DNA of 64,000 bases from Piromyces finnis finn (taxonomy: Eukaryota > Fungi > Neocallimastigomycota). This document shows positions 114 through 34,312 of the stretch, in pieces (within the stretch, counting starts at the first letter, position 1; the number at the start of each line of letters is the position of its first letter). The notes beneath the pieces were generated by a model, which worked only from the letters and a program-made list of their open reading frames with translations, ran no database searches and had not been told where the DNA came from. The stretch lies in the NCBI GenBank assembly GCA_002104945.1, contig MCFH01000008.1, positions 992,001-1,056,000 on the forward strand, written 5' to 3'. The position numbers and the translations under genes are program-made.

Positions 114-6844
<6,731 letters not shown>

Positions 6845-7269
6845 ATAATATAATTGCTTTTTGTTATAAAACATAATAAAACAACAATCTAAAAAAGATA
6901 TAATAAGATATATTAAAGGAAATATATAAAAAATATTAAAAATCATTTGTAATAACAAAATATCAATAATACGCTAAATTAAAATATTTACAACTATTAT
7001 TTTAAAATAACATTATATTGTATATTAATTTTTTTTTTTTTTTTTTTTAGTATTCTATTATTTTATTTTACTTTAATAATTATTAATATGCTTATATTAA
7101 TAAACAAATAAATCATATTTGATTATAATAACAATTTTTTTTCTTTCTTTTTCTTTTCTTTAGAAAAAAACAACTGTTGTAATAAGATAGATTTTGGGTA
7201 TAATAACATTTTACTTTGTGTTTTTGATACAATTATTTTTTGAGGACATTTCACTTAAAATTTTTCTTG

Positions 7270-8302
7270 TCATAAATTCATACATCTATTATGTTTTGGA
7301 AGATATTCATGAAGATAACTAAGGTGTCTTAAATGAAGATTTTGTTGCATCTTATAATAATTTTAATTTTTTTTTAATTCATTTTAATTAATATTACATT
7401 ATTAAAGAATAATATTTATTATTTATATTTATTTTAAAATTTAATATTTACATCTTTGATTGGAATGTACTTTCTTCTTTTATTGGCTCCATATAATGTT
7501 GTATTATCTGGAAGTTCTGTCTTTGTAGGAACGTAGCATTTTGGTCCAATAATACAATTATCACCAATTTTACTTCCATCTTCGGCTGTTGCTTTTTATT
7601 TTTTTATTTATTTATTTATGTTAATAATGTTGCTTATTATAGATTAAATTATTTTATAAATATATTATTAAAATTATATATATATGATATATTGATTTCT
7701 ATTAATTTACCTCTTGGCTGGAAATTGCAATTATTTCCTATATTTGAACTTTGAATAACAGTTCCAACTTCAAATAAATTGTAATCACCAATAATTAGAG
7801 GTTCCTTTCGCCTTTTGAGTAAATAAAATAAATAAGAGATTAATGCGCGAATAAATATAAATGTTTGTATATTTAAATTATAAATATTTACTCGTTAATA
7901 ATTACAACTCTCTCCTAATAATAAGATTATTAAACAATAATATATATTAAAATTAATAAAAATTCTACTAATTTTATTAAATGATTTTATTAATTTTATA
8001 ATTAATATACTTCGAATATATTATATGAACCAATTATAATTGGTCCACCTAAAGTTTTGAAATATGCCTTTGGATGAATAATATTCCCTTTACCTTTATT
8101 TTTAAATTATATAAAATGAAATAAAATATATTCATTTAATAAACATATTATAATTTTCTTTTATTGTCTTTTTTTTTTATTATTTTATTTTATTTATTAT
8201 TTTATTTTTTATTTTTTGTTTACCTAATTTAATATCTCCGTCATATATAATATCCCTAGAGATACAATTTTTATCTGGAATTAAATTTTGTTTTTCTGTC
8301 AT
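7270..8302 (-). CDS. DCTN6: Dynactin subunit 6 (p27), left-handed beta-helix protein; 6 exons
   Basis: Not in the ORF track. Spliced translation: MTEKQNLIPDKNCISRDIIYDGDIKLGKGNIIHPKAYFKTLGGPIIIGSYNIFEERVVIINERKEPLIIGDYNLFEVGTVIQSSNIGNNCNFQPRATAEDGSKIGDNCIIGPKC...LHLRHLSYLHEYLPKHNRCMNL*. Hexapeptide repeats plus the GGPIIIG and IIGxxNxFEVG motifs typical of p27. Confidence 0.9.
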
Positions 8303-8515
8303 TTATAATTTTCTTTAATTTGGTAAAAACATGTTATTATTTATTATATACTTATATCAATATGATATTTGTTATGTACAAAATTTAATAAAATTTTTTG
8401 AAAATTTTATATATATGAAAAAAATTTTTACATTTTATTAAAAAATATTTTTTTATTATTTTATATAATATATAATTTTTTTTGATAAGTTAAAAGTATA
8501 TTATTAATATATAGT

Positions 8516-11192
8516 ATGAGTAATAACGAATTTAAGGTTCCTGAATTACCAGTAAAAAGCAATCCTTCAAGTCCAGTGAAAGAAACAAATAAAAAAGAAC
8601 CACCGAATGGAACTCCAGGTTTTTATTTATTAATTTTTTTTATTTTGTTTTTATTTTTTATTAATATTAGTTTTTAGTTTTTTATATTAATAAATATGTA
8701 AATTAAAAATAAAATAAACTGAAATTTGAAAATGAGGATTCCATTTTTTTTGCAGGTTTATTCATAAATATTCATAAAGTACTAATTGTTACTTAAAATT
8801 TTAAATATCCTTAATTAAATATTAGTACTAAAATTACCATATAAGAAGCCAGAATGGAGTGATTTACCAAAGGAAAATTATATAATGGAAGTTATAAAGA
8901 ATGGGTATAATTAATATAATTAAGTATAGTTTTAACCATTGCTAATATTAGTTTAATTAAATGTTACTTTATGTATATCATTATTATTAATATTAATATT
9001 TTTAAGTGTAATGCTTGAAACTATCGAAATACCAAAAAATGAAGAATTTATTGTATTAGGTTATTGAAAAATATTAAAAATTTTATTAAATAAAATTAAC
9101 TATTCGTTACAATTGTATTTATAATGATTATATTAAATGTAATATTTAATAAATATAGGCCGTTTGCCATTGTGTGATGTTCAAATGGATCATCCTGTAA
9201 GTAAGAAAATTGATATAGGTTTTTCAAATAAATAAATTAATTAAACATTAATTATATCAATATAATAATGAAGAGTATATCTAGGTATCATGCAGTAATT
9301 CAATTTTCAGATAAAAGTAATTTTAAATTTTTTGATATATATAATTAGTTAAACAAAAGATAAGGATTTAATATAACTTACCTTCTTTATATTATTTAAA
9401 GGGATGGCATATATATATGATTTAGGTGAGTATTTTATTTATTAATAATTTTTTATAAAGTTTGTTATATGTATTATATATATATAAAAGAAAAGAAAAC
9501 AATGCTGGAATTATATAAATAATGCATTATTTAAAAACTTGATAATTATATAATTAAATCATTCTTGAATTATGTATATCAAAAATATTTTTTAGGAAGT
9601 GCTCATGGAACCTTTTTAAATAAGGTAAAAAAAAAATAAACGTTTATCAAGATTTTTAAGAATAATATCAATTTAAAAACATTTTCTTAATTTAAAATTT
9701 AAATATGGAAAAATCAAAGAATGTCATACCACCAAATCAGTATATACCATTACACGTTGGAGATATGATTAAATTTGGTCAGAGTACAAGAATATACATT
9801 TTCCAAGGTCCTAATGAAGAAGAAATAAGAAAAAGTGAAGAAATGTATGAGAAATATCAAGAAATGAAGAAGAAAAAGATAGATGAATTAAATAAAAAGA
9901 AGAAAGAAGAAGAAGAAGAAGGAATTAGTTGGGGATTTGCCGAAGATGCTGTTGAAGAAGTAGTTGAAAGAATGGAAAACATTCGACCAGACTATAAATT
10001 AAATGAAAATGCATTTTATTATAAAGATCCAAAGAAAGCTTTAAGAAATTGGTTAGAAAATAGAGGTTCTGAAATGGAATTCCAAATTGCAGAAGAAACA
10101 CATTCTCATGCTAAATTATATATAGCAAAAGTTGTTTTGCCTCTTGAAGATTCTTATGGACCAGTATCTACAACGGGTTCAGGTTTGAAGAAGAAGGATG
10201 CTGAGAAAGAAGCTGCATTAAATGCCTGCATTAAAATTGATCAATATATTGGATTTAAAGCTTCAATTAAGGGTTAATATATTTACAATATTTCATTTTA
10301 TTATTATTATTTTTTTTTATATTTTTTTCATTTTAATAACATAATATATTAACTTATTTAATGTATATCAAATACAAAATGTATAATATTTAAATAATAT
10401 ATACTTTTATTTTCCAAAATGTAAAATTGTATATTTTTGGAAATATAAAAACAGAAAAGAAAAGTAAGCACGATTCTGATGATGAAAGTGATAATGATAC
10501 ATTCTATGATAGAACTGGCCAAGTTGAAAAGAAAAAGAAATTATTGCAACAAAAAAAATCACATAAAAAGGAAGAAGCGGAAACGCATGAATCATTAATT
10601 AAAAAGAGTTCAATAATTGATAATCAAATATTAGAATTACAACAAGAGATAGAGGAATCTAAAAAACAAGAACTCGAAAGAAGTCAACAAAAAGTAGATG
10701 ACGATATTGATTTAGATAATTATATGAATTCATTGAATGAATCATTGAGTAAAAAGAAAATAAAACCAATTCATATATTAAATAAAGAATTAGAAAATTT
10801 AAAAAAGGTATATAATTATTATATAAAAATTATATATAGCAATCTTTTAGGAATGAATTTTTAATTCAATTGTTTTACTTTTAATTTTTTTATGGCCTTA
10901 TCGATAATAAAAGGAAAAAGAAAGAATTATTAAATTGTTAAGAATTACAAGACCTAATATTGATATATTTTCTTTAATTCAACAAAGGTAAATGATATTT
11001 ATATATATACATTATTTATTAATAAATTATTAATACATGTATTTATTTAATAATTATTAATTTAGTAAAAATGAAGCTAAACCAAATAATAACGATATAT
11101 CCAAAAAGATAGAAAAGATAGATAATGAAAATTCTAGTAGTATCGAAAAAGAAAGTTTAATAAAAAATGAAAATAATGAAATAAATAAAATA

Positions 11193-11256
<64 letters not shown>

Positions 11257-11525
11257 GAGGATTAAGTGAAGAGAAAGATATAGATTTATCTGATATAAGA
11301 GAAACTAAAAAACAAAAACAGCTAAATACTAATGTTATATCTAAGGAAGAAACACCTTTAACAAAAAAGGAAAAAACAAAAAAATTTAAAAGAAAGTTCG
11401 GTGTTATTAACAAAGAAACCTCTGAATTACTTGATAACAAAGTTAACGAAGATGTTGTTGACTGGCTTCCTCCAGAACAAAGAGATAAAGAATATAATAA
11501 TATGAATGCTGAATATGGCTATTAA
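8516..11525 (+). CDS. SLC4A1AP: Kanadaptin/SLC4A1AP-like protein: FHA domain, dsRBD-like domain, coiled coil
   Basis: Spliced FHA motifs GRLPLCDVQMDHPSISRYHAVIQF, DLGSAHGTFLNK and LHVGDMIKFGQSTR; kanadaptin-type YYKDPKKALRNWLE and GLKKKDAEKEAALNAC; DDTFYDRTG; C-terminal DWLPPEQ...NAEYGY*. Confidence 0.85.
11189..11254 (+). repeat. Coding (AAT)n tract giving poly-Asn in the last kanadaptin exon
   Basis: In frame with the flanking ...NEINKI and KRGLSEE... Confidence 0.85.
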
Positions 11526-11882
11526 TTTAATTTTTCAAAGCAATATTAGAAACTTTTTTAAAAATTAAAATTTTAAATATAATTTTTAATATTATTTGTA
11601 TTAAAAAAATTTTTTTGTACTACATGTTTTTTATTATTATTAAATATTTGATGTTATTATGAAAAACAATTTTTTATTTATTGATATTTGAAATTAATAA
11701 ATATAATTAAAATAGAAGATGTTTAAATTTTGATATAATTTTGAATAAAAATAAAACTGTACATTAATTTAATTTCCATTATTAAAAAAAACTTTCTTTT
11801 TTAAAAAAACATAATATATAATAAATTCAAATCTTATATTTTCTTTTATTTTTTTTTTCTTTTTTAAAAATATAAAGGATCG

Positions 11883-13198
11883 ATGACAATGAATAGTAAT
11901 CAGTCCTTTCAAAAGGTGTTTTCATTTTTTAATGATGTAATTGAAACTCTTAATACCAAAGAAGAAACTCAGGCAATTAAAGAGACTCAACATGCTCTTC
12001 ATGAGTTAGAAAAATTACGTGAAAAACAAAAAGCTAATTCAAAAAATGCATTAGAAGGTTGATAAATAATTATTAAATATTTTTATATTAAATATATAAA
12101 ATGATATTATTAATTATATTATGAACTTGAAATATTTTATTAATTGAGAAATTATATGGAGAAATTATGTAATTTTTTTTAATAATATTATTTAAAATCC
12201 GAAATTTGTTTTATTAATCTGAAATTTCAAAAGAGTCTTTGAAACATTGAATTTTAAAAATTTTTTAATAAAAAATTGAATTTAGTTTTAAATTTGTAAC
12301 ATATTTAATTATATTAATTTCATTCATATAGTTTTAATGAAAAAATTGGAAACAGCTGAAGAAAATGCCAATCGTTCTTTTCAAGAATTAGAAGAGTACC
12401 GAAATTCAGGAGTCTTAAATAATTTAGAAAGGGAATATAATCAATTAGAAAAAGAAAATTCGGAATTAGAACAAGAAATTAAATATCCTTTTGTTAAAAA
12501 AAGTTATATATATATTTTTTAAAAATTATAAATTTTAGAAAAATGTATTTTTTGATAGTCCTTAATTTTTTTAAAATATTAAAAATTTAATTATTAATTA
12601 TCTGATTTTACGCAGCTTCAAAATGAGTATGATGAATTATTAATAGAAGAAAAGAAATTAGAATTAAAAGAAAAAAAAGAAGAAATGTTAAAAATTGATC
12701 CTTCATTGTAAATTTATTATTATTTTATTATAAATACTTTATTTTTTATAGTTAAAATATAATTATTTATATATATATATATATTTTATTATAAATTCTT
12801 TTAAAGATTAAAAATAGGTATTTATAGAGAATTAGGTGTTGAAGCGGTAATTGATAAAAATGGAAATATAACAAAGTGCCATATTCGTATCCTTTAATTA
12901 ACATATTATTATTATTATTATTATTATTATTAAAAGTATTAAAAGGTTATTCTTAACAAAATATATTCATATATCTTATTAAATAAATATAATAAATATA
13001 TATAAACATAAAGATAATTCCAATACAAATAATAATCATACTATATTTTTCCCAAATAATCAAAATTATATTCAAACTCGACAGTCTTTAGCTTATACAA
13101 CTACAAATTTATTATGGAATCTTTTCACATCTAAAGATGATAATGAATTTATTAATATAGATTTAACACAAGGAATTAATAGGAATATTAGTATATAA
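11883..13198 (+). CDS. SPC24: Probable kinetochore Ndc80-complex subunit Spc24-like; coiled coil plus short C-terminal globular domain; 5 exons
   Basis: Long coiled coil followed by LYLYRELGVEAV and terminal YTTTNLLWNLF, resembling the Spc24 LKLYRSLG...NYxWxL pattern. Confidence 0.65.
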
Positions 13199-14615
13199 AA
13201 ATGTGATATATATAAACTTTTGTAAACAACATATAAATTATAATTAATTTTTTTATATAAAAATTAATCGTTTAATGATACCATTATTTAATAGTTTTTT
13301 AAGGTTATTATACTAATTTTTCCTTGAAATAAAAAAAAATATAAATATATTTGTCGTTTTAATTATATTTAATAAAGCGTTTAGATAATTATTTAATATA
13401 TTATAATATTTTCAATTAGTACTAATTTAAATATATAATATTGCTAAAAATATGTAAAATTGTCAAAGTATATATATACAAACTCATATTTATTTTTTTA
13501 CATACATACATATAGTATACAATTAATATATACAAATATTGTTATACCAAAAATTAAGTCTTTAATAAATATTTATCCAAAAAAAAAGTTTTTAAAATAT
13601 TATTTTTATTATTATTATTTTTATATTTTTTATATATATAAAACCAAACTCAAATTTAATATTATTATTATTATTGTTTTTTTTTTTTCTTATACTTTAT
13701 ATATAAACATATATAATTTATTAATGCGGTTCAAATTCTCAACTTACATATATAAATTTAAATGATCTATGCAACTTTTTTAATATATATTAAGTGTTTA
13801 TAATATATTGTATAATATATTTAAATTTATTTATATGAATTTATTATATATCTAAAAAAGTTTTTTTTTTTTTTTCATATATATTAATTATTTTTTAAAA
13901 TTTTTCGTACTTTTTTTTTTTGTTTTATTTTATTTCTACTTAAAATTCAAAATATATAAGAAATAAGAGAAGCGTAAGTAATTAAAAATTAAAAGGCATT
14001 CAATTCAAAAAATTTTTTAAATAAAGTATATGCAGTAATAATAAATATACCAACATCAATACTTTAAAAAATTACAAATGGAAAAAACATTTAACTCTTT
14101 AATAGTATTTATAAAAATAAAAATCCCATATATATTCAGTGAGGAATGATATTGAGGCGGATAATCAAAAAGGAAATATATAATTCACTTTAAAAAAAAA
14201 ATAATTGTTATATTAATATAAAACAATAATTTAATATAAATATATAAACATATAAATAAATAAGTAAATAAATCTTAATATGAAATTAAGAGTAATTTTA
14301 AAAATTTACCTTTTGCTTTTGTAATTTTGATTAACCTTTATTATGGGATAAAAATAAAGCTTAGAAAATATCATTTAAACAAATAAGTAATCAAATTATT
14401 AAAAAAATCATGATAAAATTTATTATAATAATAATGTTAAAAAAAAAAAAAAAAATTAAAGATATATTGAAATTCTATAATTATTCTCAATTTCTTAATA
14501 TTATATTAAAAATGAAAATAATGTTGTTAGTTTAAATAATTAATGAGAAAAAATAATTAATTTAAAATATTATTAACATTTTTAATTAATATATAATTAA
14601 AAAATAAAAAGGAAG

Positions 14616-17001
14616 ATGAATAGCGCATCTCAAAGAATTAACACATTATTGGATCCTGTTAATCATCCAGATTTTAGAAGCATTACTCTTCCAAAACATG
14701 AAGATGGAAAACAATATTACCCACATGAAATTTTTGGACAAAATGTTTTTAGTCTTAATGAAATGGAAAAAACTTTACCAAAATCCATATTTCAAAGATT
14801 TCGTCAACAGCAAAGAGGTAAAAATTAGTTTAAAAAAAAAAAAAATTTCGAAAAAAAAAAATAAACTTAAATTGATAAAATTTCCATTTTTCAAATAACC
14901 TGTTATTATATTTCTAACAAAAATAATAATAATTATAGGTAGAACATCATTAGATCGTGCTACTGCTGATGCTATAGCTCATGCTGTTAGGGTTTGGGCT
15001 ATGGATCATGGTGCTACTCACTATACTCACTGGTTCCAACCACAAACTGATACCACTGCCGAAAAGCATGATTCTTTCTTAAATTTAAAGACCAGTATTG
15101 TTAATGGTGTTGAAAGTACAGTCGCTATTGATTCATTCTCTGGTAGTCAGCTTTTACAAGCTGAACCAGATGCTTCCTCATTCCCTCATGGTAGTATTAG
15201 AAGTACTTTCGAAGCTCGTGGTTACACTGTCTGGGATACTACATCTCCATTATTTATTCAAGATGGTCCACATGGTACTTCTGTACTTTATATTCCATGT
15301 GTTTTCATTTCTTATAATGGTGAAGCTCTTGATGAAAAAACCGTTCTTTTACGTTCTAATGAAGCTATTTCTAAAGCTGCTGTTCGTCTTTTACATATGA
15401 TTGGTGATACTGAAGTTAGACATGTTCATACTTCTTTAGGTGTTGAACAAGAATTTTTCTTAATTGACCGTGGTCTTTATTCTCTTCGTCCAGATTTAAA
15501 GATTTGTGGTAGAACTTTAGTTGGTTCCGTTCCACCAAAGCACCAACAATTGGATGATCACTATTTTGGTCAAATCCCAAGTCGTGTTTTAGCTACTATT
15601 GCTGAAACAGAAATGGAATTATACAAGCTCGGTGTACCAATGAAAACTCGTCATAATGAAGTTGCTCCAGCTCAATTTGAAATGGCTCCAATCTTTGAAG
15701 AATCATCTGTTGCTGTTGATCATAATCTTTTAACTATGCAAGTTTTACACCGTGTTGCTCACCGTCATAAATTAAAGTGCCTTTTCCATGAAAAACCATT
15801 TAAAGGTGTTAATGGCTCTGGTAAGCACTGCAATTGGTCTGTTTGTACCGATGCTGGTGAAAACCTTTTAGATCCATCAGTAAAGCCAGAAAGTAATCCA
15901 CGTTTCCTTTTATTCTTCATTGCTACAGTATATGCAGTTTACAAACATGGTACTCTTTTACGTGCTGGTATTGCAACTTCTAGTAATGAACATCGTCTTG
16001 GTGCAAATGAAGCCCCACCAGGTATTATTTCTGTTTTCCTTGGTGATCAACTTGATGAAGTTTTGAATGCTGTTGAAGAGCAACGTGAATTAAAGTCATT
16101 CTCTCAACATCAAATTCAATCTGTAAAGGTAGGTGGTACAGTTCTTGATCTTAAAGTTGCCACTTTACCTCCAATTTCTCGTGATTTAACTGATCGTAAC
16201 CGTACCTCACCATTTGCTTTTACTGGAAATAAATTTGAATTCCGTGCAGTTGGTTCTAAACAATCACCATCATTCCCAGTTACTTTACTTAATGCTGCTG
16301 TTACTGAAGCTCTTCTTGAAATTACTTCTGTTTTAGAAGAAGTTAAAGGTGATAAGCCAAAGGCTTCTCTTGAAGATGTACTTACAGTTGTTCGTATGTT
16401 TATTAAAAAGAGTAAACCAATTCGTTTTGAAGGAGATAATTATTCTCAAGAATGGATTGAAGAAGCTGCTAGAAGAGGTATTGAAAATATTACTTCATGT
16501 CCAGAAGTTTTCAAGAAATTATTAGAACACCAAAAGTTATTAACTGAAACTGTTCCAATCTTAACTATGGCTGAACTTCATTGCCGTTACCAAGTTATGG
16601 TTGAAAGATATGTTAAAGATTTAGTTATTGAAGGTAACACTTTAAAGACTATGATTAATCAATATGTCCTTCCAGCTGCTTTTGATTATAGAAAGGAAGT
16701 TGCTTCTACTTTAGTATCACTCAATAATTTAGGTATGGATATTAATGATATTCCAGAAAAGAAGGTACTTGATGAAATTGGCAATGCTACTACTGAACTT
16801 GTTAAGCTTGAAAACAAACTTTGTGATACCCTTGAAAAGATTGTTACTATTAATGATTTAGAACAAGCTGCTGTTGTTGCTCATGATGAAATATTTAATC
16901 TTGCTGAAAAAATTCGTATCTTCACTGATGATATTGAAAGTAAGGTTGCTACTAAATGGTGGCTCTTACCAAAATACAGTGAATTATTATTCCAATTATA
17001 A
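14616..17001 (+). CDS. glnN: Glutamine synthetase type III (GlnN-type); 2 coding exons, intron 14818-14938
   Basis: GSIII signatures: FGQNVFS, WAMDHGATHYTHWFQP, AEKHDSF, EPDASSFP, RSTFEARGYTVWD, GVEQEFFLID, DDHYFG, HNEVAP, HEKPFKGVNGSGKHCNWS, HRLGANEAPP, DRNRTSPFAFTGNKFEFRAVGS. Strong CGT/GGT/GCT/TTC codon bias. Confidence 0.97.
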
Positions 17002-22656: not shown

Positions 22657-23715
22657 ATCTATTATAATTAAAATAAGAAACAAATTGAATAGAATATATC
22701 AATATCTAAAGAAATTATTAACTAAAAAAAAAGTTATAACGCAAGACATATATATAAACGAAAAAAATATAATAAATATATATATCTAATGAATTATTAA
22801 TTAAAATTACTCCAATATATATATATTTATAAAAAAAAAAAAGAAAATAAAATAGAATAAAATATGAATAGTATAATTTATTAATAACAAAATATATTAT
22901 TTTATTTTGTTTTAGTTTCTTTTTTTTTTTTTATTTTTTTTTTAAAGTGCAAATTATCAAAAGATATCTGAAAAAAATAATATAAATAGAATATAATATT
23001 TATTAATTTGTAGTATATTTTTTAAAAAATGTATTAACAATGTGATTAAATTTAAATTTAAAAATTACTAAATAATGTATTAAAAAAAAAAAAAACCTAA
23101 AATAAAATATTTTTAATAGAAAAATAAAATTAAATATTTATTTTTTATTTTATTTTTATTTTATTTTATCAATATAATTTTACCAGTAAAAAAGTAATGT
23201 TTTATTTTTATAAAAGGCTTTTACAATGCTATAAGCATTTTTTTTTTTCTTAATTTTTTAACTTAATGTGGTAACAAAAAAAAACTTTACCACAAAAATT
23301 AATTAATTAGTTAATTAATTAATTTTTTTTTTAAAAAAAAAAAAAATTATTATTGGATTCAAAGCAAATTTTAATTTTAAATTATTTTAAATTTTAAGGA
23401 TTAAACAGAAAATTTATATATTATCTTTTTATAAACTTAACCATTCATTTCAATATAAATAGAACTACTAAATATTTTTCTTCTTCTTCTTCATTTTCAT
23501 TTACAATATAGTTTTTAGCATTTTATTAATATATAGTTAATTATTATATTAAATGATAGACCATTATATAGAATTATTTTTAAAAAATAAAACTAAAATT
23601 TAAATTGTAAATAACCAAAAAATAGAGATAAAATAAATTAATAACAATAATAAATTAATATTTTAATATAAATAAAAAAATACTATTAAATATTAATAAT
23701 AGAAAAACATAGAAA

Positions 23716-26691
23716 ATGAACACTAGTATTGATAAAGATTTAAAAAAAATCTTACTTAGAAGAAGAAATAAAGTAATAATTGATAGTAATCAAAATATTT
23801 GTGATGTATATAAGAATGAAATTTTGAATGGTATTAAATGTAATGATAATCTTAAAAATTGTTGTTACTCTATTGAAAGTATAAATGAAACAGTAATTAT
23901 TATAAAATTTAATAATATATTATTAGAATTTGAAAATGGAGAAATAAAAAAGAATATTAAGGAAATTGAAACTTTTGAATCAGAATTTATCGCACTTTCA
24001 AAAATAATAAAAGAGGAAACAGAAAAAATTCAAAAAAGAATGGTTCTTTCTCTTTCATTTAATGAAAACTTAAACAATCTAGGTTATTCTATGGATGAAA
24101 ATATGTTTAGAGTTGTCTCTACTTTTAGTACTAATGAAATAGATGAATTGAATAAAGAACTTATTCCAGCGTTAAAAGAAATTATAGGGGATAATGTTTG
24201 GTATAATCCTTTATATCCAAATTTTCCAAAACAAGTTATTGAAGAAAAAAGAGCTCATCTTTATCTTTATGCACTTCTTCATTATTGGACAAATGGAAAA
24301 TTTTACCCTTTTACTGAAGTTGAGGAAAGAAATAAAACGCCAATTGAAGTTCAATATAAAAATATTACTATAGGTAAAGAGGAAGATATTCATGAACTTA
24401 TGTATAATTTAATGAATGCAGCTGAATCAATTTCTGAACAAGATATAAAAGATTTAGAAACATATTTTAATAAGTATAAAGATTTTAATAAATATATCCC
24501 AGAAACTATTTGTAATAAAGAAAATCTTGCTATTATAACAAATTTAATTATTAAAAATAGTGAAGAAATTCCAATTGATAAAATTATTCCAAAATTCAAC
24601 GTTGTTACAGATGTTTTAAGATTATCAGCTGTAATGTCTGGAAATAGTGCTTCTTTAAATAATAAAATAAAATTTAAGTCATTTTCTAATAGAGAAAGAA
24701 GATTATTAATGCAATTATTAAACAATTGTGGAAATAGATTAGAAGATTTCTTTAGATATAGAAATTTATGGGAAAGAGTATGTGAAAGAATTCACCCTGG
24801 TAAATATAGAAGTACATATCCCGATTTAGTTGATGATTTATTAGGCGCTTATAAATTTAAGAAGAATAGTAAAGCATATAAGAAGGAAATTGAAAGTTAC
24901 GAGAAAATTTTGAATTGGTATAATATCTTTAATAATAATCCAAAATCAAAATCATTTTCTATTTTTATTGAAGAAATTGAAAAGTTATTTAAAATTAGAC
25001 CAAAAATCCCGAATGAAATTTTTGAATATCTTAATAATGCAAAATGTAAATGTAAATGTAATGACAGTGAAAATGAATTTAGTATTGATGTTTCAATAAT
25101 TAAGGAAAGACACGATAAATTAAATGTAATGCTAGTAGAATCATCAAAACAAATGAAGGAATATAAGCAAAATAACAGGAGATTCTCATCGAAAGTTGAA
25201 GCTAAATTGAGTAATAAAGAATTTGATGAAGCTATGAATCTTTTGTCTCAAAAGCCAGGTGTCTTTTCAAGACGTCTTGATGAGTTATTATCGAAAGTAT
25301 CTGATGATGATAAAGTTATTGGTTATTTTGAAAATATTGCACCAAAAGTTTCTGTTAAAGTATTACTTAGTTTAAAGGGTTATTTCCAAAACCGTTTCAA
25401 AAAACTAAAGGTAAGAGTGTTTTTAATTAAAGGAAAAGTTTCAAAGCATTGTTTAAAAACAAAAGTTAAGGAAGAGTTAGATATGTCGGTTTGTGAAAAA
25501 ATTTGTGAGATTTGTGACAAGGCTTTAATTAATCATTTCAAAGATAAACCAAAATTGAATAATGTTTATTTAAGTGAAAAGATGAAGAAACAAATCATTC
25601 CTCTTGATATAAGAAGTGCAAGTTCAGCCATGGAAACTTATTCTAAAGGCTCCAGATTTGATTTATTTTTCAAGAAGTTAACTGCAGAAGAGCAGGAACA
25701 ACATATAAAAGACTTGAATATAGAATTAGCAAATAATGAAGAAATATTAAAAAAAAACGAAGAAGAATTAAGTCACCTAAAAAATGATTTAGCTAATGAG
25801 GAAAAGACTGAAGAAGAAAAAAAGAAAATTAATGATGAAATTGTAAAAGTTAATAATAAAATTAGAAAGATAAACGAAGAAATTTCAAATAATAAAAATA
25901 TGATTGAATTTGCCAATTCTAGGCTAGGTAAGGATAAATGTAATAAAGTTAGATTGTTTATATGGTGGACAAATACAAAAAAAGATGAAAGAGTAGATAT
26001 TGATTTATCAGTAATGATTTATGATGAAAATCTTGTGGATTTAGGACATGTTTCATTTAAAAATTTAGGAAATGATAAATATAAAATATATCACTCTGGT
26101 GATATAGTTGATGGTGGTGATTTTGATGGAGATGGTGTAGCAGAATTTATTGATTTTGATCCTGATGAGATTTTAAGTAACGGAGGTCGCTATATTGCAA
26201 CTAGTGTTATTTCTTTCAATGGGTTAGCTTTCAATAAGCTTGATAATTGTAAATTTGGTTGGATGGAAAGAGAAGATTTAAATAGTAATGAATTATTTGA
26301 ACCAAAAACAGTAAGACAAAAGTTAGATATTAATACTGAAAAAACATCTACCACACCAGTCATATTTGATTGTAAAACTCGTGAAATTGTTTGGGTTGAT
26401 GCTACATTAACTGGTAATAAAATTTGTGTGTGCATTGAAAATTCAAAAGAACCAATGAATGCAATTCTATATTATTATCTTAATCCATTAAAATGTAATA
26501 TGTATGATTTATTTGATCTACATATTCAAGCTAGAGGCGGAAAATTAGTTAATACTGAAGAGGAATTATCAGAAGGTGATGTTGCTTTTGTACCATATTT
26601 ACCATATAAATGTAAGGAAGGTGTTAAGTACATTCGTCCAACTGATTTAGATATAGTTTTATCTGAATATATGACATCTGCATTAGATTAA
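23716..26691 (+). CDS. Intronless 991-aa bacterial-type protein with C-terminal TerD-like domain (Ter stress-response-associated family)
   Basis: Single uninterrupted 2,976-nt ORF among intron-rich genes. Motifs recalled from a bacterial/phage family: ILLRRRNKV, NPLYPNFPKQV, ALLHYW, TDVLRL, ERIHPG, PGVFSRRLDELL, RSASSA, GSR, IWWTN...VDIDLS, HSGDI, EFIDFD, FGWMERE, FEPKTVRQK, PVIFDC, VWVD. Confidence 0.85.
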   Translation: MNTSIDKDLKKILLRRRNKVIIDSNQNICDVYKNEILNGIKCNDNLKNCCYSIESINETVIIIKFNNILLEFENGEIKKNIKEIETFESEFIALSKIIKEETEKIQKRMVLSLSFNENLNNLGYSMDENMFRVVSTFSTNEIDELNKELIPALKEIIGDNVWYNPLYPNFPKQVIEEKRAHLYLYALLHYWTNGKFYPFTEVEERNKTPIEVQYKNITIGKEEDIHELMYNLMNAAESISEQDIKDLETYFNKYKDFNKYIPETICNKENLAIITNLIIKNSEEIPIDKIIPKFNVVTDVLRLSAVMSGNSASLNNKIKFKSFSNRERRLLMQLLNNCGNRLEDFFRYRNLWERVCERIHPGKYRSTYPDLVDDLLGAYKFKKNSKAYKKEIESYEKILNWYNIFNNNPKSKSFSIFIEEIEKLFKIRPKIPNEIFEYLNNAKCKCKCNDSENEFSIDVSIIKERHDKLNVMLVESSKQMKEYKQNNRRFSSKVEAKLSNKEFDEAMNLLSQKPGVFSRRLDELLSKVSDDDKVIGYFENIAPKVSVKVLLSLKGYFQNRFKKLKVRVFLIKGKVSKHCLKTKVKEELDMSVCEKICEICDKALINHFKDKPKLNNVYLSEKMKKQIIPLDIRSASSAMETYSKGSRFDLFFKKLTAEEQEQHIKDLNIELANNEEILKKNEEELSHLKNDLANEEKTEEEKKKINDEIVKVNNKIRKINEEISNNKNMIEFANSRLGKDKCNKVRLFIWWTNTKKDERVDIDLSVMIYDENLVDLGHVSFKNLGNDKYKIYHSGDIVDGGDFDGDGVAEFIDFDPDEILSNGGRYIATSVISFNGLAFNKLDNCKFGWMEREDLNSNELFEPKTVRQKLDINTEKTSTTPVIFDCKTREIVWVDATLTGNKICVCIENSKEPMNAILYYYLNPLKCNMYDLFDLHIQARGGKLVNTEEELSEGDVAFVPYLPYKCKEGVKYIRPTDLDIVLSEYMTSALD

Positions 26692-27081
26692 AAAAATAAA
26701 TAACATATATAATAAAAAAAAAAAAGGCTTTTTTAAATACAATTTTTATTACTTAAATACTATATAATATATTATATTTATATATAAATTACTCTTTATA
26801 ATTATTATTTTTTTAATTATATGTTTTTACTTTTATTACAAATTTATGTAAAGTTTTAATTTCATATGTATTTTATTTCAGTATATAATTGAAAAATAAC
26901 ATTAAATAATAAAGATTTTTAAAATCAAAGATAAATGCCAAATCATGTATTAAAAAAATTTTTTTTTTCTTCATTTTATTAATATATTATTAAGAAATTA
27001 TTTCATTATATATTAAATAAAAATTAAATATCAAAAAATATTTTTTTTTTATTTTAAAAGTAAGAGTAGAATCAATTTGAA

Positions 27082-28886
27082 ATGTTTTTAGGAAAAATTA
27101 ATGTAAATGAACCTATCTATACAGTGAAATGTTGTGAAGTCAATAAAAATATTAAAGAAAATGAAAACAATGTAGAATTATATGATATGATAGCATATGG
27201 TAGATATTATTTAATAATTTAGTTAATTAAAATAAAAATTAATTTCTTTTTTTTTTTTTGTTAGGATGTGAAACACAGCTTGGTATTTTAAGGAACGGGA
27301 ACGAATATAAAAATAAGGTATATTTATAATAATAAAACAATTTAATGGTAAAAGTATATATGAGAAATAATAATTAAAAAGATTTTTTAAATATATATTG
27401 TATATTCTTTTCAAATTAAAATAATAATGTTAGCAAATGTAAGTATTAAAAAGTTATAATTATATCTAAACTTTTTTTTTTTTTTTTTTTTTTTTTAACT
27501 AAAAACAAATAAAAAAATATAAATATTTAAAAATAATAAATTAACACATATTTATATATTTTCTTTTGATATTTATTTATTATTATTTTTTTTTAAAGTT
27601 CATATGAAGTACATCACAAGTATTTATGTGGCTCAAAAATTAATTCAATTTCTTGGTCAAATGAATCATATTTATATAAAAAAAATAATGAATTTGTTTC
27701 AAATATATTGTAAGATTTCATTTGGATATGGATATATATATATACATATATTATTATTTCATTTTTATAAAAATTTATCAATTAATTTATGTATATACAA
27801 TATAAAATAGAATTGCAACAACAAGCACAGATAAAAATATAAGAGTGTATAATAATGATAACATAGAGATTATTTCAGGTCATAAAGATTTTATCAATGA
27901 TATAGCATTTGGATATGATAAATCAGAAAGAATTTTGGCTTCAGTCAGTGGTAAATTTTGTATTAATTATTTCTTTAAATTTATTTAAATTAAATGTTAA
28001 ATGTTTAAAAAAATTTATTAAGATGATCGTACATGTAGAGTATGGAAAATATCAAAAGATCAAAAAAATAATCAATCAGAAGAATATTATAGAATAATAT
28101 TAAAAAGTTCAGGACAATCAGTTAGTTTTCATAAACAAAATGTACAATTAATGATGGTCGCCGAAAGAAATGGTTCAATAAGAATTATTAACTGGAAAAC
28201 CTCAGAATTTTTATTTACATTTTATGAACCAGGTCTTGAAGATATCGGTAGTTTAAATACTGTCGAAAGTGCTATTGGCTTAAGATCTGCAGATTGGAAT
28301 CCAAATAATTTACATATGTATGAAATAATATTGAATTTTTATTTATTTGTAAAGTTTTATTAATAATAAATATATTAAAATAAATTAGAATTGGGTCCGT
28401 TATTGGACAAAAATTTTATATATGGAATACATCTGAAGCACCAGTACATAAATATATTTATTCAGGAAATGTTCATAAAGATGGTTCAAAGTGTATAAAG
28501 TAAGTAGTTAAGAATCAATAATTTTATTATGAAATGTAATAAAAAATGTTCATGTATTTATTAAATAAAATGAAATTAAATATATATGTAGATTCTCATC
28601 AAATGATGAAAATTATTTTGCAACATTATCATCATCAACTAAGAGAACAATTTATATTCACAAATTAACTATGAAAGGTAATAATAATATATATACTTTA
28701 AAAACAAAAGATAAAAAACAATAAACTGATTAAATATTAATTTATATTCATATAGTTCCAATAAAATTAGACGTACCAAATAATTTACCATTAGCTCAAA
28801 TTGAATCTATTTGTTGGCATTCAACCAAACCGTTATTAGTTGGTTGCATTGGTAATCAATTATTATTTTGGGAAATAAATGTTTAA
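27082..28886 (+). CDS. NUP37: Nucleoporin Nup37-like WD40 protein; multi-exon, including a predicted 5-nt micro-exon
   Basis: Spliced motifs IAYGG, INSISWS, GHKDFINDIAF, LASVSDDRTCRVW, LMMVAERNGSIRI, LRSADWNP, ICWHSTKPLLVG, LLFWEINV* follow the order of Nup37 blades. Confidence 0.85.
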
Positions 28887-29146
28887 AATTCGTTTTATTT
28901 GGATATATAAAGTTTCAATATTTTTTAAATATTTTAAATATTTTCAATATACTTTAAATATTATTAATATATTAATAGATGGATATATAAATTTTATTTA
29001 AAACATGTTTAAAATCAGTCGAAATATTAAAATAAAGATAATTTCTAACAATAATTATAATAGTATTAAATTTATTATTGGTATATTAATATTTATTAAA
29101 TTATATGTAATTTTTATCAATTGATAATAATAATTCATTTAATGGT

Positions 29147-34312
<5,166 letters not shown>

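What the first reader, a model, noticed from the sequence alone, without database searches (positions are those of the whole stretch)
23716..26691. Intronless bacterial-type Ter-associated gene in a fungal chromosome (probable horizontal transfer)
Seen: a 2,976-nt ORF with no introns, whereas the other 15 intact genes here all contain introns; the frame is intact and codon use is AT-rich like its neighbours. Recalled: its ordered motifs (LLRR-N-term, NPxYPNFPxQV, HYW, TDVLRL, ExxHPG, PGxFxRRLDxLL, RSAS, WWTN-VDIDLS, HSGDI, FGWMERE, EPKTV, PVIFDC) match a large, functionally uncharacterised bacterial and phage family with a C-terminal TerD-like domain, common in Firmicutes and related to the MXAN_6230/SCO0854 RING proteins. 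I see no RING domain in this copy. TerD-family proteins are linked to tellurite, phage and toxin stress responses. Inference: a gut bacterium or phage donated it, and the fungus may use it as a stand-alone stress or defence factor. I do not know of a characterised eukaryotic member.
Basis: partly seen in the sequence, partly recalled or inferred. Interest (0 to 1): 0.8.

Follow-up and report, generated by a model that had tools for sequence, protein, structure and literature searches.

The report
Bacterial TerD-like gene family domesticated by gut fungi
An intact, intronless 991-codon gene in this anaerobic gut fungus belongs to a bacterial and phage protein family taken up long ago from gut Clostridia or their phages, then duplicated and kept under selection; its function is still unknown.

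Summary
Window 23716-26691 (+) is one 991-codon ORF with no stop codons. It has the host's composition (GC 25%, GC3 14%) and lies 1.0 Mb inside a 1.24-Mb contig, evidently of Piromyces finnis, between intron-bearing eukaryotic genes.

It runs collinear from end to end with RING-less bacterial and phage proteins of about 700 aa, which are relatives of NCBIfam NF041916. The C-terminal domain has a TerD fold (Foldseek E 6e-7 to Klebsiella TerD) but falls below Pfam's TerD cut-off.

Horizontal transfer is well supported:
- All fungal copies form one clade (100%) nested inside gut Clostridia (99%) in a tree rooted on RING-type members.
- They share three fungus-specific insertions.
- Synteny is conserved in Piromyces sp. 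E2.
- dN/dS is 0.13-0.28.

This is an old, multi-copy family and not a one-off: four loci in this genome, with orthologues in Piromyces, Neocallimastix and Orpinomyces.

"Ter-associated" is not supported. No ter genes flank it in 77 bacterial loci, and none were found in the fungus.

The helical N-terminal module most resembles Ro60/TROVE by structure only; profile tests failed. Some bacterial copies sit beside RtcB or inside tRNA arrays. Expression could not be tested. A 2024 paper lists a "TerD_like" transfer from Firmicutes in tortoise gut fungi.

The parts
23716..26691 (+). Whole intronless gene: 991 codons plus the stop codon
   Evidence: Single ORF. Collinear from end to end with bacterial proteins of about 700 aa. 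dN/dS 0.13-0.28 against orthologues.
23716..23811 (+). N-terminal conserved helix with the LLRR motif (aa 1-32)
   Evidence: Alignment A1. First helix of the N-core model.
23812..24060 (+). Fungus-specific insertion 1 (aa 33-115)
   Evidence: Present in all fungal rows and absent from all bacterial rows of A1. dN/dS 0.40.
24061..24810 (+). Helical core, part 1 (aa 116-365): motifs YNPxYPNFP, HYW, KEN, TDVLRL, ERR, HPG
   Evidence: A1 and A3 invariant columns. Confident helical model of the bacterial equivalent. dN/dS 0.23.
24811..25185 (+). Fungus-specific insertion 2 (aa 366-490)
   Evidence: Alignment A1. dN/dS 0.32.
25186..25665 (+). Helical core, part 2 (aa 491-650): motifs PGxFxRRLD and RSAS. 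Together with part 1 it forms the module whose nearest non-family folds are Ro60/TROVE.
   Evidence: dN/dS 0.14.
25666..25944 (+). Fungus-specific coiled-coil insertion (aa 651-743)
   Evidence: Alignment A1. Weak Pfam coiled-coil hit DUF7491 at aa 661-725. dN/dS 0.15.
25945..26415 (+). TerD-fold beta-sandwich (aa 744-900)
   Evidence: Model pLDDT 85.9. Foldseek: 2kxt E 6e-7, then 2qz7, 3ibz, 2qng, TM by target 0.65-0.67. Profile against PDB: 3ibz E 0.007. Pfam TerD E 0.063, below the cut-off.
25990..26010 (+). (R)VDIDLS loop (aa 759-765), aligned to TerD's DLDAS calcium-site segment
   Evidence: Invariant D763, L764, S765. HMMER alignment to 3ibz and 2kxt.
26092..26154 (+). HSGD...GDG..EFID acidic loop (aa 793-813), aligned to TerD's HTGDN.TGEG(E/D)GDDE calcium-binding motif. 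The two Asp residues before the Glu are replaced and there is a 3-residue insertion.
   Evidence: Invariant H793, S794, G795, D796, G805, G807, E810, F811, D813. Alignment.
26416..26688 (+). C-terminal helical subdomain (aa 901-991), ending in the conserved ...D.D..LSEYM tail
   Evidence: Model helices at domain residues 174-248. Alignment A1.

Best explanation
Shown: this is a genuine chromosomal gene of an anaerobic gut fungus, evidently Piromyces finnis. It descends from one ancient horizontal transfer of a bacterial or phage gene. The donor lay among gut Clostridia (the Lachnospiraceae, Ruminococcus and Christensenella groups) or their large phages. The transfer predates the split of Piromyces, Orpinomyces and Neocallimastix. 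The gene then took on the host's AT-rich codon usage, gained three fungus-specific insertions including a coiled coil, and duplicated into at least three or four paralogue lineages, two of them with a tandemly duplicated N-terminal module. It stayed intronless and under purifying selection. The protein has two modules: a helical module with a conserved core of about 470 residues (about 650 aa here with the fungal insertions), and a C-terminal beta-sandwich with the TerD fold that keeps most of TerD's acidic metal-site loops. It has no signal peptide and no RING. Inferred: it works as a cytoplasmic, stand-alone binding or scaffold protein, not as an enzyme of a Ter operon. The TerD-like domain binds a divalent cation, probably Ca2+, and possibly a nucleotide-derived ligand. 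The helical module, built like the Ro60/TROVE ring, holds an RNA or RNP client. That would make it an analogue of Ro60 with TerD in place of the vWA domain, used in RNA surveillance or repair during stress or conflict. The evolutionary part is about 90% likely. The TerD-fold assignment is about 90% likely. The Ro60-like RNA-binding mechanism is about 30-35% likely.
For: Integration: the gene lies at 1.016 Mb of a 1.24-Mb contig. It has host composition and eukaryotic neighbours split into exons. The independent Piromyces sp. E2 assembly has the same PIG-U ... gene ... WD40 order, with an intact single ORF of about 989 codons. Four runs from three studies hold 91-100% of the ORF's words. Origin: the family occurs in many bacterial phyla and in phages. 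The fungal rows form one clade with 100% support. Rooted on true RING-type NF041916 members, that clade nests in a 99% clade whose other members are all gut Clostridia. Three insertions are shared by all fungal copies. Age and retention: there are four loci in this genome. The query's orthogroup includes Piromyces E2, Orpinomyces and N. californiae. dN/dS is 0.13-0.28 overall and 0.14-0.40 per region. TerD fold. Ro60-like lead: of 48,161 PDB chains, the top two are Ro60 proteins (Z 8.4 and 8.3, with 265 and 242 residues aligned), a third Ro60 has 274 aligned, and all other hits are local matches of about 95 residues. Foldseek gives probability 0.97 to phage Ro60. In BFVD the first hit outside the family is a phage 'TROVE domain-containing protein' (E 0.006, probability 1.0). 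Gene context: RtcB is the upstream neighbour in one Lachnospiraceae clade. The Ruminococcus/Clostridia clade and a Christensenella copy sit in or beside tRNA arrays, with a tmRNA and a Thg1-like tRNA-His guanylyltransferase. Literature: TerD is proposed to recognise specialised nucleotide derivatives (PMC7159879), and ROT/TROVE proteins act as RNA-repair platforms in phages (PMC7824862).
Against: Function: no sequence-level link to TROVE was found. Pfam TROVE hits none of 40 members. hhalign against 9 and then 26 real TROVE proteins gives probability 0.2-0.3%, with E 0.23-0.28 against 0.74 for a reversed control. The Atlas shape search returns no TROVE cluster. Z of about 8 is within the range that helical repeats can reach by chance (note), and the TM-scores are only 0.30-0.35. 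Rfam finds no Y RNA beside 10 bacterial loci or beside the fungal gene. The RtcB and tRNA contexts are each confined to one or a few clades, and no neighbour is conserved across the family (best 13 of 77 loci). The TerD metal motif is altered: the two Asp residues before the Glu are replaced. Evolution: the trees used the quick search with SH-aLRT support only, and composition heterogeneity was flagged. Within Clostridia the donor is unresolved. Absence from other eukaryotes was not tested exhaustively.
Confidence: 0.6

Rival explanations
1. It is a Ter-type stress or defence factor. The TerD-like domain would sense Ca2+ or a nucleotide-like signal in a response to chemical, phage or toxin stress, with the helical module acting only as an adaptor and with no role in RNA.
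For: TerD fold and partly kept metal-site loops. The Aravind group views TerD as a ligand-sensing domain of conflict systems. The family occurs in phages. Profile tests give no support for TROVE homology.
Against: No ter genes lie next to it in 77 bacterial loci. No PADLOC defence model matches. The fungus shows no TerC or canonical TerD. This reading leaves the large, strongly conserved helical module unexplained.
Confidence: 0.25
2. It is bacterial contamination or a chimeric assembly join, not a fungal gene.
For: The gene is intronless, of bacterial type, and has no annotated Pfam domain.
Against: GC3 is 14%, like the host. The gene lies deep inside a 1.24-Mb contig between eukaryotic genes. 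The same synteny occurs in an independent Piromyces sp. E2 assembly. There are four paralogous loci on four contigs. All gut-fungal copies share fungus-specific insertions. Orthologues occur in four sequenced gut fungi.
Confidence: 0.02
3. It is an ancient eukaryotic gene inherited vertically and lost almost everywhere else, or one transferred from fungi to bacteria.
For: TerD domains do exist in eukaryotes in other architectures: C2-TerD, ubiquitin-TerD and UBC-TerD-F-box clusters in the Atlas. I could not search all eukaryotic proteomes.
Against: In the rooted tree the fungi nest several nodes deep inside bacteria, within Clostridia. The family spans more than 12 bacterial phyla plus phages. 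In the top 120 hits the only eukaryotic proteins are from Neocallimastigomycota. The eukaryotic TerD clusters reach only TM of about 0.57 and lack the helical module.
Confidence: 0.03
4. The several fungal paralogues come from several independent transfers, not from one transfer followed by duplication.
For: The paralogue groups are deeply diverged (39-52% identity), and gut fungi have taken up hundreds of bacterial genes (PMC10978972).
Against: All fungal rows form one clade with 100% support in three trees. They share three insertions at the same positions, which no bacterial row has.
Confidence: 0.04

Closest known systems
RING-less bacterial and phage 'TerD family protein' or 'cytoplasmic protein' family of about 700 aa (PHROG 33734; for example the copies in Coprococcus aceti, Ruminococcus sp. 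YE282, Niallia circulans and Lactobacillus phage LpeD)
   Same: Collinear from end to end with all motifs shared, at 38-47% identity. Same two-module build: a helical N-module plus a TerD-fold C-domain. No RING.
   Different: The fungal proteins carry three extra insertions totalling about 290 aa, including a coiled coil. They use eukaryotic AT-rich codons. Some paralogues have a duplicated N-module. No member has been characterised experimentally, as far as I could find.
NCBIfam NF041916, MXAN_6230/SCO0854 family RING domain-containing protein
   Same: Homologous helical module and TerD-like C-domain: E 1e-94, and Atlas TM 0.85 for the C-domain and 0.63 for the N-module.
   Different: The fungal protein scores 318 bits against a 600-bit cut-off. 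It lacks the Prok-RING_4 finger that true members carry at about aa 130-180. The RING-type proteins form the outgroup in the tree.
TerD (Pfam PF02342; Klebsiella TerD 2kxt; Streptomyces 3ibz, 2qz7)
   Same: Same beta-sandwich fold (E 6e-7, TM by target 0.67). The DxDxS and H-x-G-D...G-x-G..E loops align with TerD's calcium-site segments.
   Different: Identity is 14-17%. The Pfam score is 13 bits against a 25.3-bit cut-off. The acidic motif is altered. The domain is fused to a large helical module and an extra C-terminal helical subdomain. It is not in a ter operon.
Ro60/Rsr (TROVE helical ring plus vWA domain; 2nvo, 1yvp, phage 9l5y)
   Same: It is the nearest non-family fold of the N-module in three searches. 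Both are large helical-repeat modules followed by a metal-binding domain. Some bacterial copies neighbour RtcB, tRNA arrays or a tmRNA, contexts that recall the Rsr-RtcB RNA-repair operons.
   Different: No sequence or profile similarity. The second domain is TerD-like, not vWA. No Y RNA was detected. The structural scores are modest.
'TerD_like' horizontal transfer event from Firmicutes in tortoise-associated gut fungi (Pratt et al. 2024, PMC10978972, Table 1)
   Same: Same phylum of recipient, same donor phylum, and the same kind of domain label.
   Different: The paper marks the event as not occurring in mammalian gut fungi. This family is present in Piromyces, Neocallimastix and Orpinomyces. 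No sequences were available to confirm that it is the same gene.

Membership tests
NCBIfam NF041916 (MXAN_6230/SCO0854 RING protein, equivalog) | Whole-protein score at or above the curated 600-bit cut-off | tested here: not met
   318.4 bits, E 9.9e-95. True members score 836-859 bits.
NCBIfam NF041916 (MXAN_6230/SCO0854 RING protein, equivalog) | Prok-RING_4 zinc finger inserted at about aa 130-180 | tested here: not met
   Pfam finds no RING in the query or in P0036, and does find PF14447 in L117 and L118.
NCBIfam NF041916 (MXAN_6230/SCO0854 RING protein, equivalog) | Helical N-module plus TerD-like C-domain, collinear | tested here: met
   Four matched stretches. Atlas structural rows. RING-less proteins match model positions 2-107, 167-354 and 384-770.
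RING-less bacterial/phage family (PHROG 33734) | Significant HMM match and full-length collinearity with shared motifs | tested here: met
   E 7.5e-62. Alignment A1 has more than 100 invariant columns.
Pfam TerD (PF02342) | HMM score at or above the 25.3-bit gathering cut-off | tested here: not met
   No hit for the whole protein at E<=1. The isolated domain scores 13.2 bits, E 0.063. 11 of 40 family members hit, best E 5.4e-5.
Pfam TerD (PF02342) | TerD beta-sandwich fold | tested here: met
   Model pLDDT 85.9. 2kxt E 6e-7, and 2qz7, 3ibz, 2qng with TM by target 0.65-0.67. Atlas TM 0.76/0.70 to a cluster in which 21% of members carry PF02342 TerD.
Pfam TerD (PF02342) | Calcium-site motifs (DxDxS; GDN.TGEGDGDDE) | tested here: inconclusive
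   DIDLS, and the H, G, D, G-x-G and E positions, are invariant and align with TerD. The DD before the Glu is replaced and 3 residues are inserted.
Pfam TerD (PF02342) | Binds Ca2+ | not testable with these tools
   Needs ITC or NMR on purified protein.
Ter (tellurite-resistance) gene system | Genomic association with terZABCDEF, telA or terY genes | tested here: not met
   No ter gene appears among the recurrent neighbours in 77 bacterial loci. The fungal genome has no Pfam TerD or TerC match.
Ro60/TROVE | Pfam TROVE (PF05731) match or profile-profile homology | tested here: not met
   0 of 40 members hit TROVE. hhalign probability 0.2-0.3%.
Ro60/TROVE | Helical-repeat ring fold | tested here: inconclusive
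   VIA Z 8.4, 8.3 and 6.1 with 242-274 residues aligned, ranking first and second of 48,161 chains. Foldseek probability 0.97-1.0 but TM 0.30-0.35. No TROVE cluster in the Atlas.
Ro60/TROVE | C-terminal vWA domain with a MIDAS site | tested here: not met
   The C-domain has the TerD fold.
Ro60/TROVE | Adjacent Y RNA partner | tested here: inconclusive
   No YrlA or Y RNA reaches Rfam gathering scores in 10 bacterial loci or in window 23400-30000. tRNA arrays and a tmRNA flank some copies.
Horizontally acquired gene of Neocallimastigomycota | Nested within a bacterial clade in a rooted tree | tested here: met
   The fungal clade (100%) lies inside a 99% clade of gut Clostridia, rooted on RING-type members.
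Horizontally acquired gene of Neocallimastigomycota | Truly integrated in the fungal chromosome | tested here: met
   Contig position, neighbouring genes, synteny in Piromyces sp. E2 and host codon usage.
Horizontally acquired gene of Neocallimastigomycota | Absent from other eukaryotes | tested here: inconclusive
   Only Neocallimastigomycota appear among the eukaryote-sourced hits in the top 120. No tool here searches all eukaryotic genomes.
Horizontally acquired gene of Neocallimastigomycota | Expressed | not tested
The kind of each run was only guessed.

The most novel reading that the evidence does not exclude
Gut fungi lack a canonical Ro60/TROVE gene and RtcB. They may have domesticated and expanded a prokaryotic or phage analogue of Ro60, made of a TROVE-like helical ring fused to a TerD-like metal or ligand sensor in place of vWA. 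It would act as an RNA-surveillance or RNA-damage-response module, for example against the tRNA- and rRNA-targeting toxins of the dense rumen bacterial community. The fungus-specific coiled coil and the duplicated N-modules would give new partners or oligomeric states.
Probability: 0.15. Interest if true: 0.75.

Novelty: new member of a known kind. Interest (0 to 1): 0.5.

Why it matters
Gut fungi are known to have taken up hundreds of bacterial genes, mostly metabolic enzymes and CAZymes. This case differs because the acquired gene is a large non-enzymatic protein of unknown function, drawn from a family shared by bacteria and large phages. It was nevertheless kept for the whole radiation of the mammalian gut fungi, multiplied to four loci, remodelled with eukaryote-specific insertions, and held under purifying selection. 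That makes the family worth characterising, and the fungal copies give independent evidence that it does something useful outside any operon.

The result also suggests a correction to the published record. A 'TerD_like' transfer was reported as confined to tortoise gut fungi, but a family fitting that description is present in mammalian gut fungi.

The Ro60-like fold, the RtcB neighbours and the tRNA-array contexts together give a concrete, testable hypothesis for a family that has none on record.

Tried and rejected
The message says the filter trips by chance and is evidence of nothing. That was the only call allowed, so there is no read-level test of contiguity or expression. I sent those positions to no search tool afterwards; later calls used 23400 and above, or exons elsewhere.
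2. A PDB sequence search with the full-length profile found nothing meaningful.
3. PADLOC defence models: no match.
4. A conserved operon partner in bacteria: none. The best neighbour cluster occurs in 13 of 77 loci and is an ABC-F ATPase. The others are lineage-specific housekeeping genes.
5. TROVE homology by sequence was rejected three times: Pfam on 40 members, hhalign against 9 TROVE proteins, and hhalign against 26 TROVE proteins from four phyla with a reversed control.
6. The Atlas shape search for the N-module returned only the family's own superfamily.
7. Y RNA or other known RNA families next to the gene: none beyond tRNAs and a tmRNA.
8. Literature. 'SCO0854' and 'MXAN_6230' appear in no held paper. 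The supplements of Pratt 2024 and Ciach 2024 mention neither TerD nor the orthologue identifiers. The 2011 RING paper is not held under the PMC id given in a reference list. The id I recalled for the 2012 Ter paper returned nothing. My recollection that Pfam describes Prok-RING_4 proteins as having 'ROT/TROVE-like repeats and a C-terminal TerD domain' therefore remains unverified.
9. I considered the fungal N-terminal insertion as a degenerate RING because it contains a few Cys residues. I rejected this because the Cys are not conserved among fungal copies.
10. The split of the C101 paralogue is not an intron. The two frames abut at query residues 562/564, so it is a 1-nt frameshift or an assembly indel.


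Full report
**1. The observation**

Window 23716-26691 (+) is a single ORF of 991 codons. The whole window has 12-37% GC. The ORF has 25% GC and 14% GC3, the same as its orthologues.

The window is positions 992001-1056000 of a 1.24-Mb contig in a 56.5-Mb, 232-contig assembly. One paralogue is identical to Piromyces finnis BCR36DRAFT_332808 in the tree's kept columns, so the genome is evidently P. finnis.

The flanking genes are split into exons and are eukaryotic: TPR upstream, the GPI-transamidase subunit PIG-U further upstream, and WD40 downstream.

**2. What the protein is related to**

Pfam calls no domain on the whole protein, and PADLOC gives nothing.

NCBIfam NF041916 (MXAN_6230/SCO0854 RING protein) matches at E 1e-94, but with 318 bits against a 600-bit cut-off. 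PHROG 33734, of unknown function, matches at E 7.5e-62.

The word-based protein search found two groups:
- Full-length relatives at 39-73% identity in Piromyces sp. E2, P. finnis, Neocallimastix californiae and Orpinomyces, and in gut metagenomes.
- Hundreds of proteins of about 700-750 aa, scoring 450-480 bits.

The second group are bacterial. A scan of one genome per species found 250 loci. The best are in gut and rumen Lachnospiraceae (Coprococcus, Acetatifactor), Ruminococcus, Christensenella and Anaerolineaceae, followed by members of more than ten other phyla. Eleven phage records also carry relatives, mostly large phages.

The bacterial proteins align with the fungal one from the first helix to the last residues. 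The fungal proteins have three extra segments: aa 33-115, aa 366-490, and a coiled coil at about aa 651-743.

Neither the fungal protein nor its close bacterial relatives have a RING. True NF041916 members carry Prok-RING_4 at about aa 130-180.

**3. The C-terminal domain**

I built an AlphaFold model of aa 738-991 from a 40-sequence alignment. It is confident (pLDDT 85.9) and shows a beta-sandwich followed by a small helical subdomain.

Foldseek against the PDB returns Klebsiella TerD (2kxt, E 6e-7, TM by target 0.67) and the Streptomyces TerD homologues 2qz7, 3ibz and 2qng, at 14-17% identity. Nothing else comes within three orders of magnitude in E-value. The top row, 9a6r_B, is labelled an integrative model of GLPD-SCP2, and I did not follow it up.

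The Atlas's own model agrees.

By sequence the link is weak but consistent:
- The family profile hits 3ibz at E 0.007 and 2kxt at E 0.1.
- It aligns the invariant VDIDLS and HSGD...GDG..EFID loops with TerD's DLDAS and HTGDN.TGEG(E/D)GDDE segments.
- Pfam TerD is hit by 11 of 40 members (best E 5e-5). The query domain scores only 13 bits against a cut-off of 25.3.

So this is a divergent TerD-fold domain that fails Pfam membership. Its metal-site loops are the most conserved part of the protein, though the motif is altered.

**4. "Ter-associated" does not hold**

Across 77 bacterial loci no neighbour is conserved; the best occurs in 13 loci. The recurrent neighbours are an ABC-F ATPase, MerR and AraC-GyrI regulators, oxidoreductases, a permease and RtcB. 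None is a ter gene. The fungal genome shows no Pfam TerD or TerC match.

**5. Horizontal transfer**

*Integration.* The points in section 1 apply. In addition, the independent Piromyces sp. E2 assembly has the orthologue as one intact ORF of about 989 codons between PIG-U and WD40 genes, the same order as here. The deposited 705-aa model under-calls that ORF. Four runs from three studies hold 91-100% of the ORF's words.

*Direction and donor.* All fungal rows form one clade with 100% support in three trees. Without an outgroup, the fungal stem joins an unresolved node. When the tree is rooted on two true RING-type NF041916 proteins, the fungal clade sits several nodes inside the bacteria. It falls in a 99% clade whose other members are Christensenella, a Ruminococcus/Clostridia group and the Lachnospiraceae groups. 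The long fungal stem was not drawn to the long outgroup branch, which argues against long-branch attraction.

Caveats: these are quick searches with SH-aLRT support only, composition heterogeneity was flagged, and the donor within Clostridia is unresolved. The Ruminococcus/Clostridia group lies in phage-like regions (section 7), so a phage vector is possible.

*Age.* This genome has four loci:
- C211, the query.
- C165, 1009 aa.
- C1, a 1611-aa form with a duplicated N-module.
- C101, a long form with a 1-nt frameshift near query residue 563, which may be an assembly indel.

The query's orthogroup (97% support) contains Piromyces sp. E2, Orpinomyces and N. californiae, and the other paralogue groups also mix genera. 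The acquisition and the duplications therefore predate the split of these genera.

*Selection.* Pairwise dN/dS (NG86) is 0.13-0.28. By region it is 0.14-0.40, and the fungus-specific insertions are included in that range.

*Not settled.* I could not search all eukaryotes. In the top 120 hits the only eukaryote-sourced proteins are from Neocallimastigomycota. The eukaryotic TerD clusters in the Atlas have other architectures and reach only TM of about 0.57.

**6. Prior record**

Pratt et al. 2024 (PMC10978972, Table 1) list a 'TerD_like' transfer from Firmicutes in both tortoise gut-fungal genera and mark it as not occurring in mammalian gut fungi. No sequence is given in the held supplements. 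If it is this family, the transfer goes back to the phylum's stem, and the 'No' for mammalian gut fungi needs correcting. Nothing is held on SCO0854 or MXAN_6230.

**7. How it may work**

I modelled the N-module on the compact bacterial protein P0036 (residues 1-469, pLDDT 83.7). It is almost entirely helical.

Structural searches:
- Foldseek finds no significant PDB match. A phage Ro60 appears with probability 0.97 and TM 0.30.
- An exhaustive VIA-align search of 48,161 chains ranks two Ro60 proteins first: Thermus phage Ro60 (Z 8.4, 265 residues aligned) and Deinococcus Rsr (Z 8.3, 242 aligned over its TROVE domain). Xenopus Ro60 follows at Z 6.1 with 274 aligned. Every other hit is a local helical-repeat match of about 95 residues.
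- In the viral structure library, after four members of the family itself, the next hit is a phage 'TROVE domain-containing protein' (E 0.006).

Evidence against a TROVE relationship:
- Pfam TROVE hits none of 40 members.
- hhalign against 9 and then 26 genuine TROVE proteins from four phyla gives probability 0.2-0.3%.
- The Atlas search shows no TROVE cluster.
- Z of about 8 is not decisive for helical repeats.

Gene context adds weak, clade-limited hints:
- RtcB is the immediate upstream gene in one Lachnospiraceae clade.
- In Ruminococcus sp. YE282 and a related MAG, the gene sits inside arrays of 11-15 tRNA genes. The YE282 locus also has a tmRNA. A Thg1-like tRNA-His guanylyltransferase lies downstream in both.
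- Related copies, and a Christensenella copy, have tRNAs directly beside them.
- No Y RNA was found.

From memory, and unverified here, Pfam's text for Prok-RING_4 describes 'ROT/TROVE-like repeats and a C-terminal TerD domain'. I could not retrieve the source.

My best reading, at about one chance in three, is a Ro60-like scaffold in which a TerD-type metal or ligand-binding domain replaces vWA, acting on RNA during stress or conflict. The main rival, at about one in four, is a Ter-type ligand or Ca2+ sensor with no RNA role. The fungus has no canonical TROVE or RtcB gene.

**8. Limits**

The tool's message says the filter trips by chance and is evidence of nothing. I sent those positions to no search tool afterwards and worked beside them. 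Expression and read-level contiguity are therefore untested.

**9. Verdict**

It is a well-supported ancient horizontal transfer, which in gut fungi is a known kind of event, and it may already be listed once under the label 'TerD_like'.

The new points are:
- The family's presence and expansion in mammalian gut fungi.
- The fungus-specific remodelling of the protein.
- Rooted placement of the fungal clade within gut Clostridia.
- The lack of any Ter association.
- A structural lead towards Ro60 for a family with no known function.

Interest is moderate.

Noticed in passing
window 15001-17001 (+): A 666-aa uninterrupted exon encodes a type III glutamine synthetase (GSIII_N, Gln-synt_C and Gln-synt_C-ter domains). 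Its GC is 33-37% against 12-27% around it. It is 44-47% identical to GSIII of Bernardetia, Monoglobus, Parabacteroides and Bacteroides. An AT-rich intron appears to precede the exon. It may be another gene of bacterial ancestry.
   Followed up: partly
G000:C1:2527269-2532102 (L112 1270-6102, minus strand): A long-form paralogue of 1611 aa, in one ORF. The N-terminal module (query aa 2-382) is present twice in tandem. Piromyces sp. E2 (P0026, 1583 aa) and metagenomic fungi have the same form.
   Followed up: partly
G000:C101:724212-729054 (L113 1213-6055, minus strand): A fourth paralogue is split into overlapping frames of 1210 and 445 aa. The matches abut at query residues 562/564, so this is a 1-nt frameshift. 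It is either a young pseudogene or a long-read indel error. It is the longest branch in the fungal tree.
   Followed up: partly
L047 (Ruminococcus sp. YE282, NZ_FMUV01000001.1) 2669-13256; L048 4693-12225: The family member sits inside an array of 11-15 tRNA genes that includes unusual anticodons. L047 also has a tmRNA with an odd tag peptide, a group II intron reverse transcriptase and a transposase. Both loci have a Thg1-like tRNA-His guanylyltransferase. The region looks like part of a large phage or mobile element in a rumen isolate.
   Followed up: partly
L058, L041, L039, L020, L012, L030, L024, L049 (one Lachnospiraceae clade): The RNA ligase RtcB is encoded in 8 loci, immediately upstream on the same strand in 7 of them. 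I inferred that these are the clade named here; I did not list the loci individually.
   Followed up: partly
L053 (CAVCCL010000088.1, labelled Bifidobacterium catenulatum): This contig's copy is nearly identical to the Coprococcus aceti and Coprococcus MAG copies and branches inside them. The contig is probably mis-binned and not a Bifidobacterium gene.
   Followed up: no
L115 4614-7646 (Piromyces sp. E2 KZ150853.1); P0009 (N. californiae): The deposited gene models for the orthologues (705 aa and 698 aa) are much shorter than the intact single ORF of about 990 codons seen in the Piromyces sp. E2 DNA. The automated annotation seems to have imposed introns or truncations on an intronless gene.
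   Followed up: partly
The message says the filter trips by chance and is evidence of nothing. I did not examine them further.
   Followed up: no
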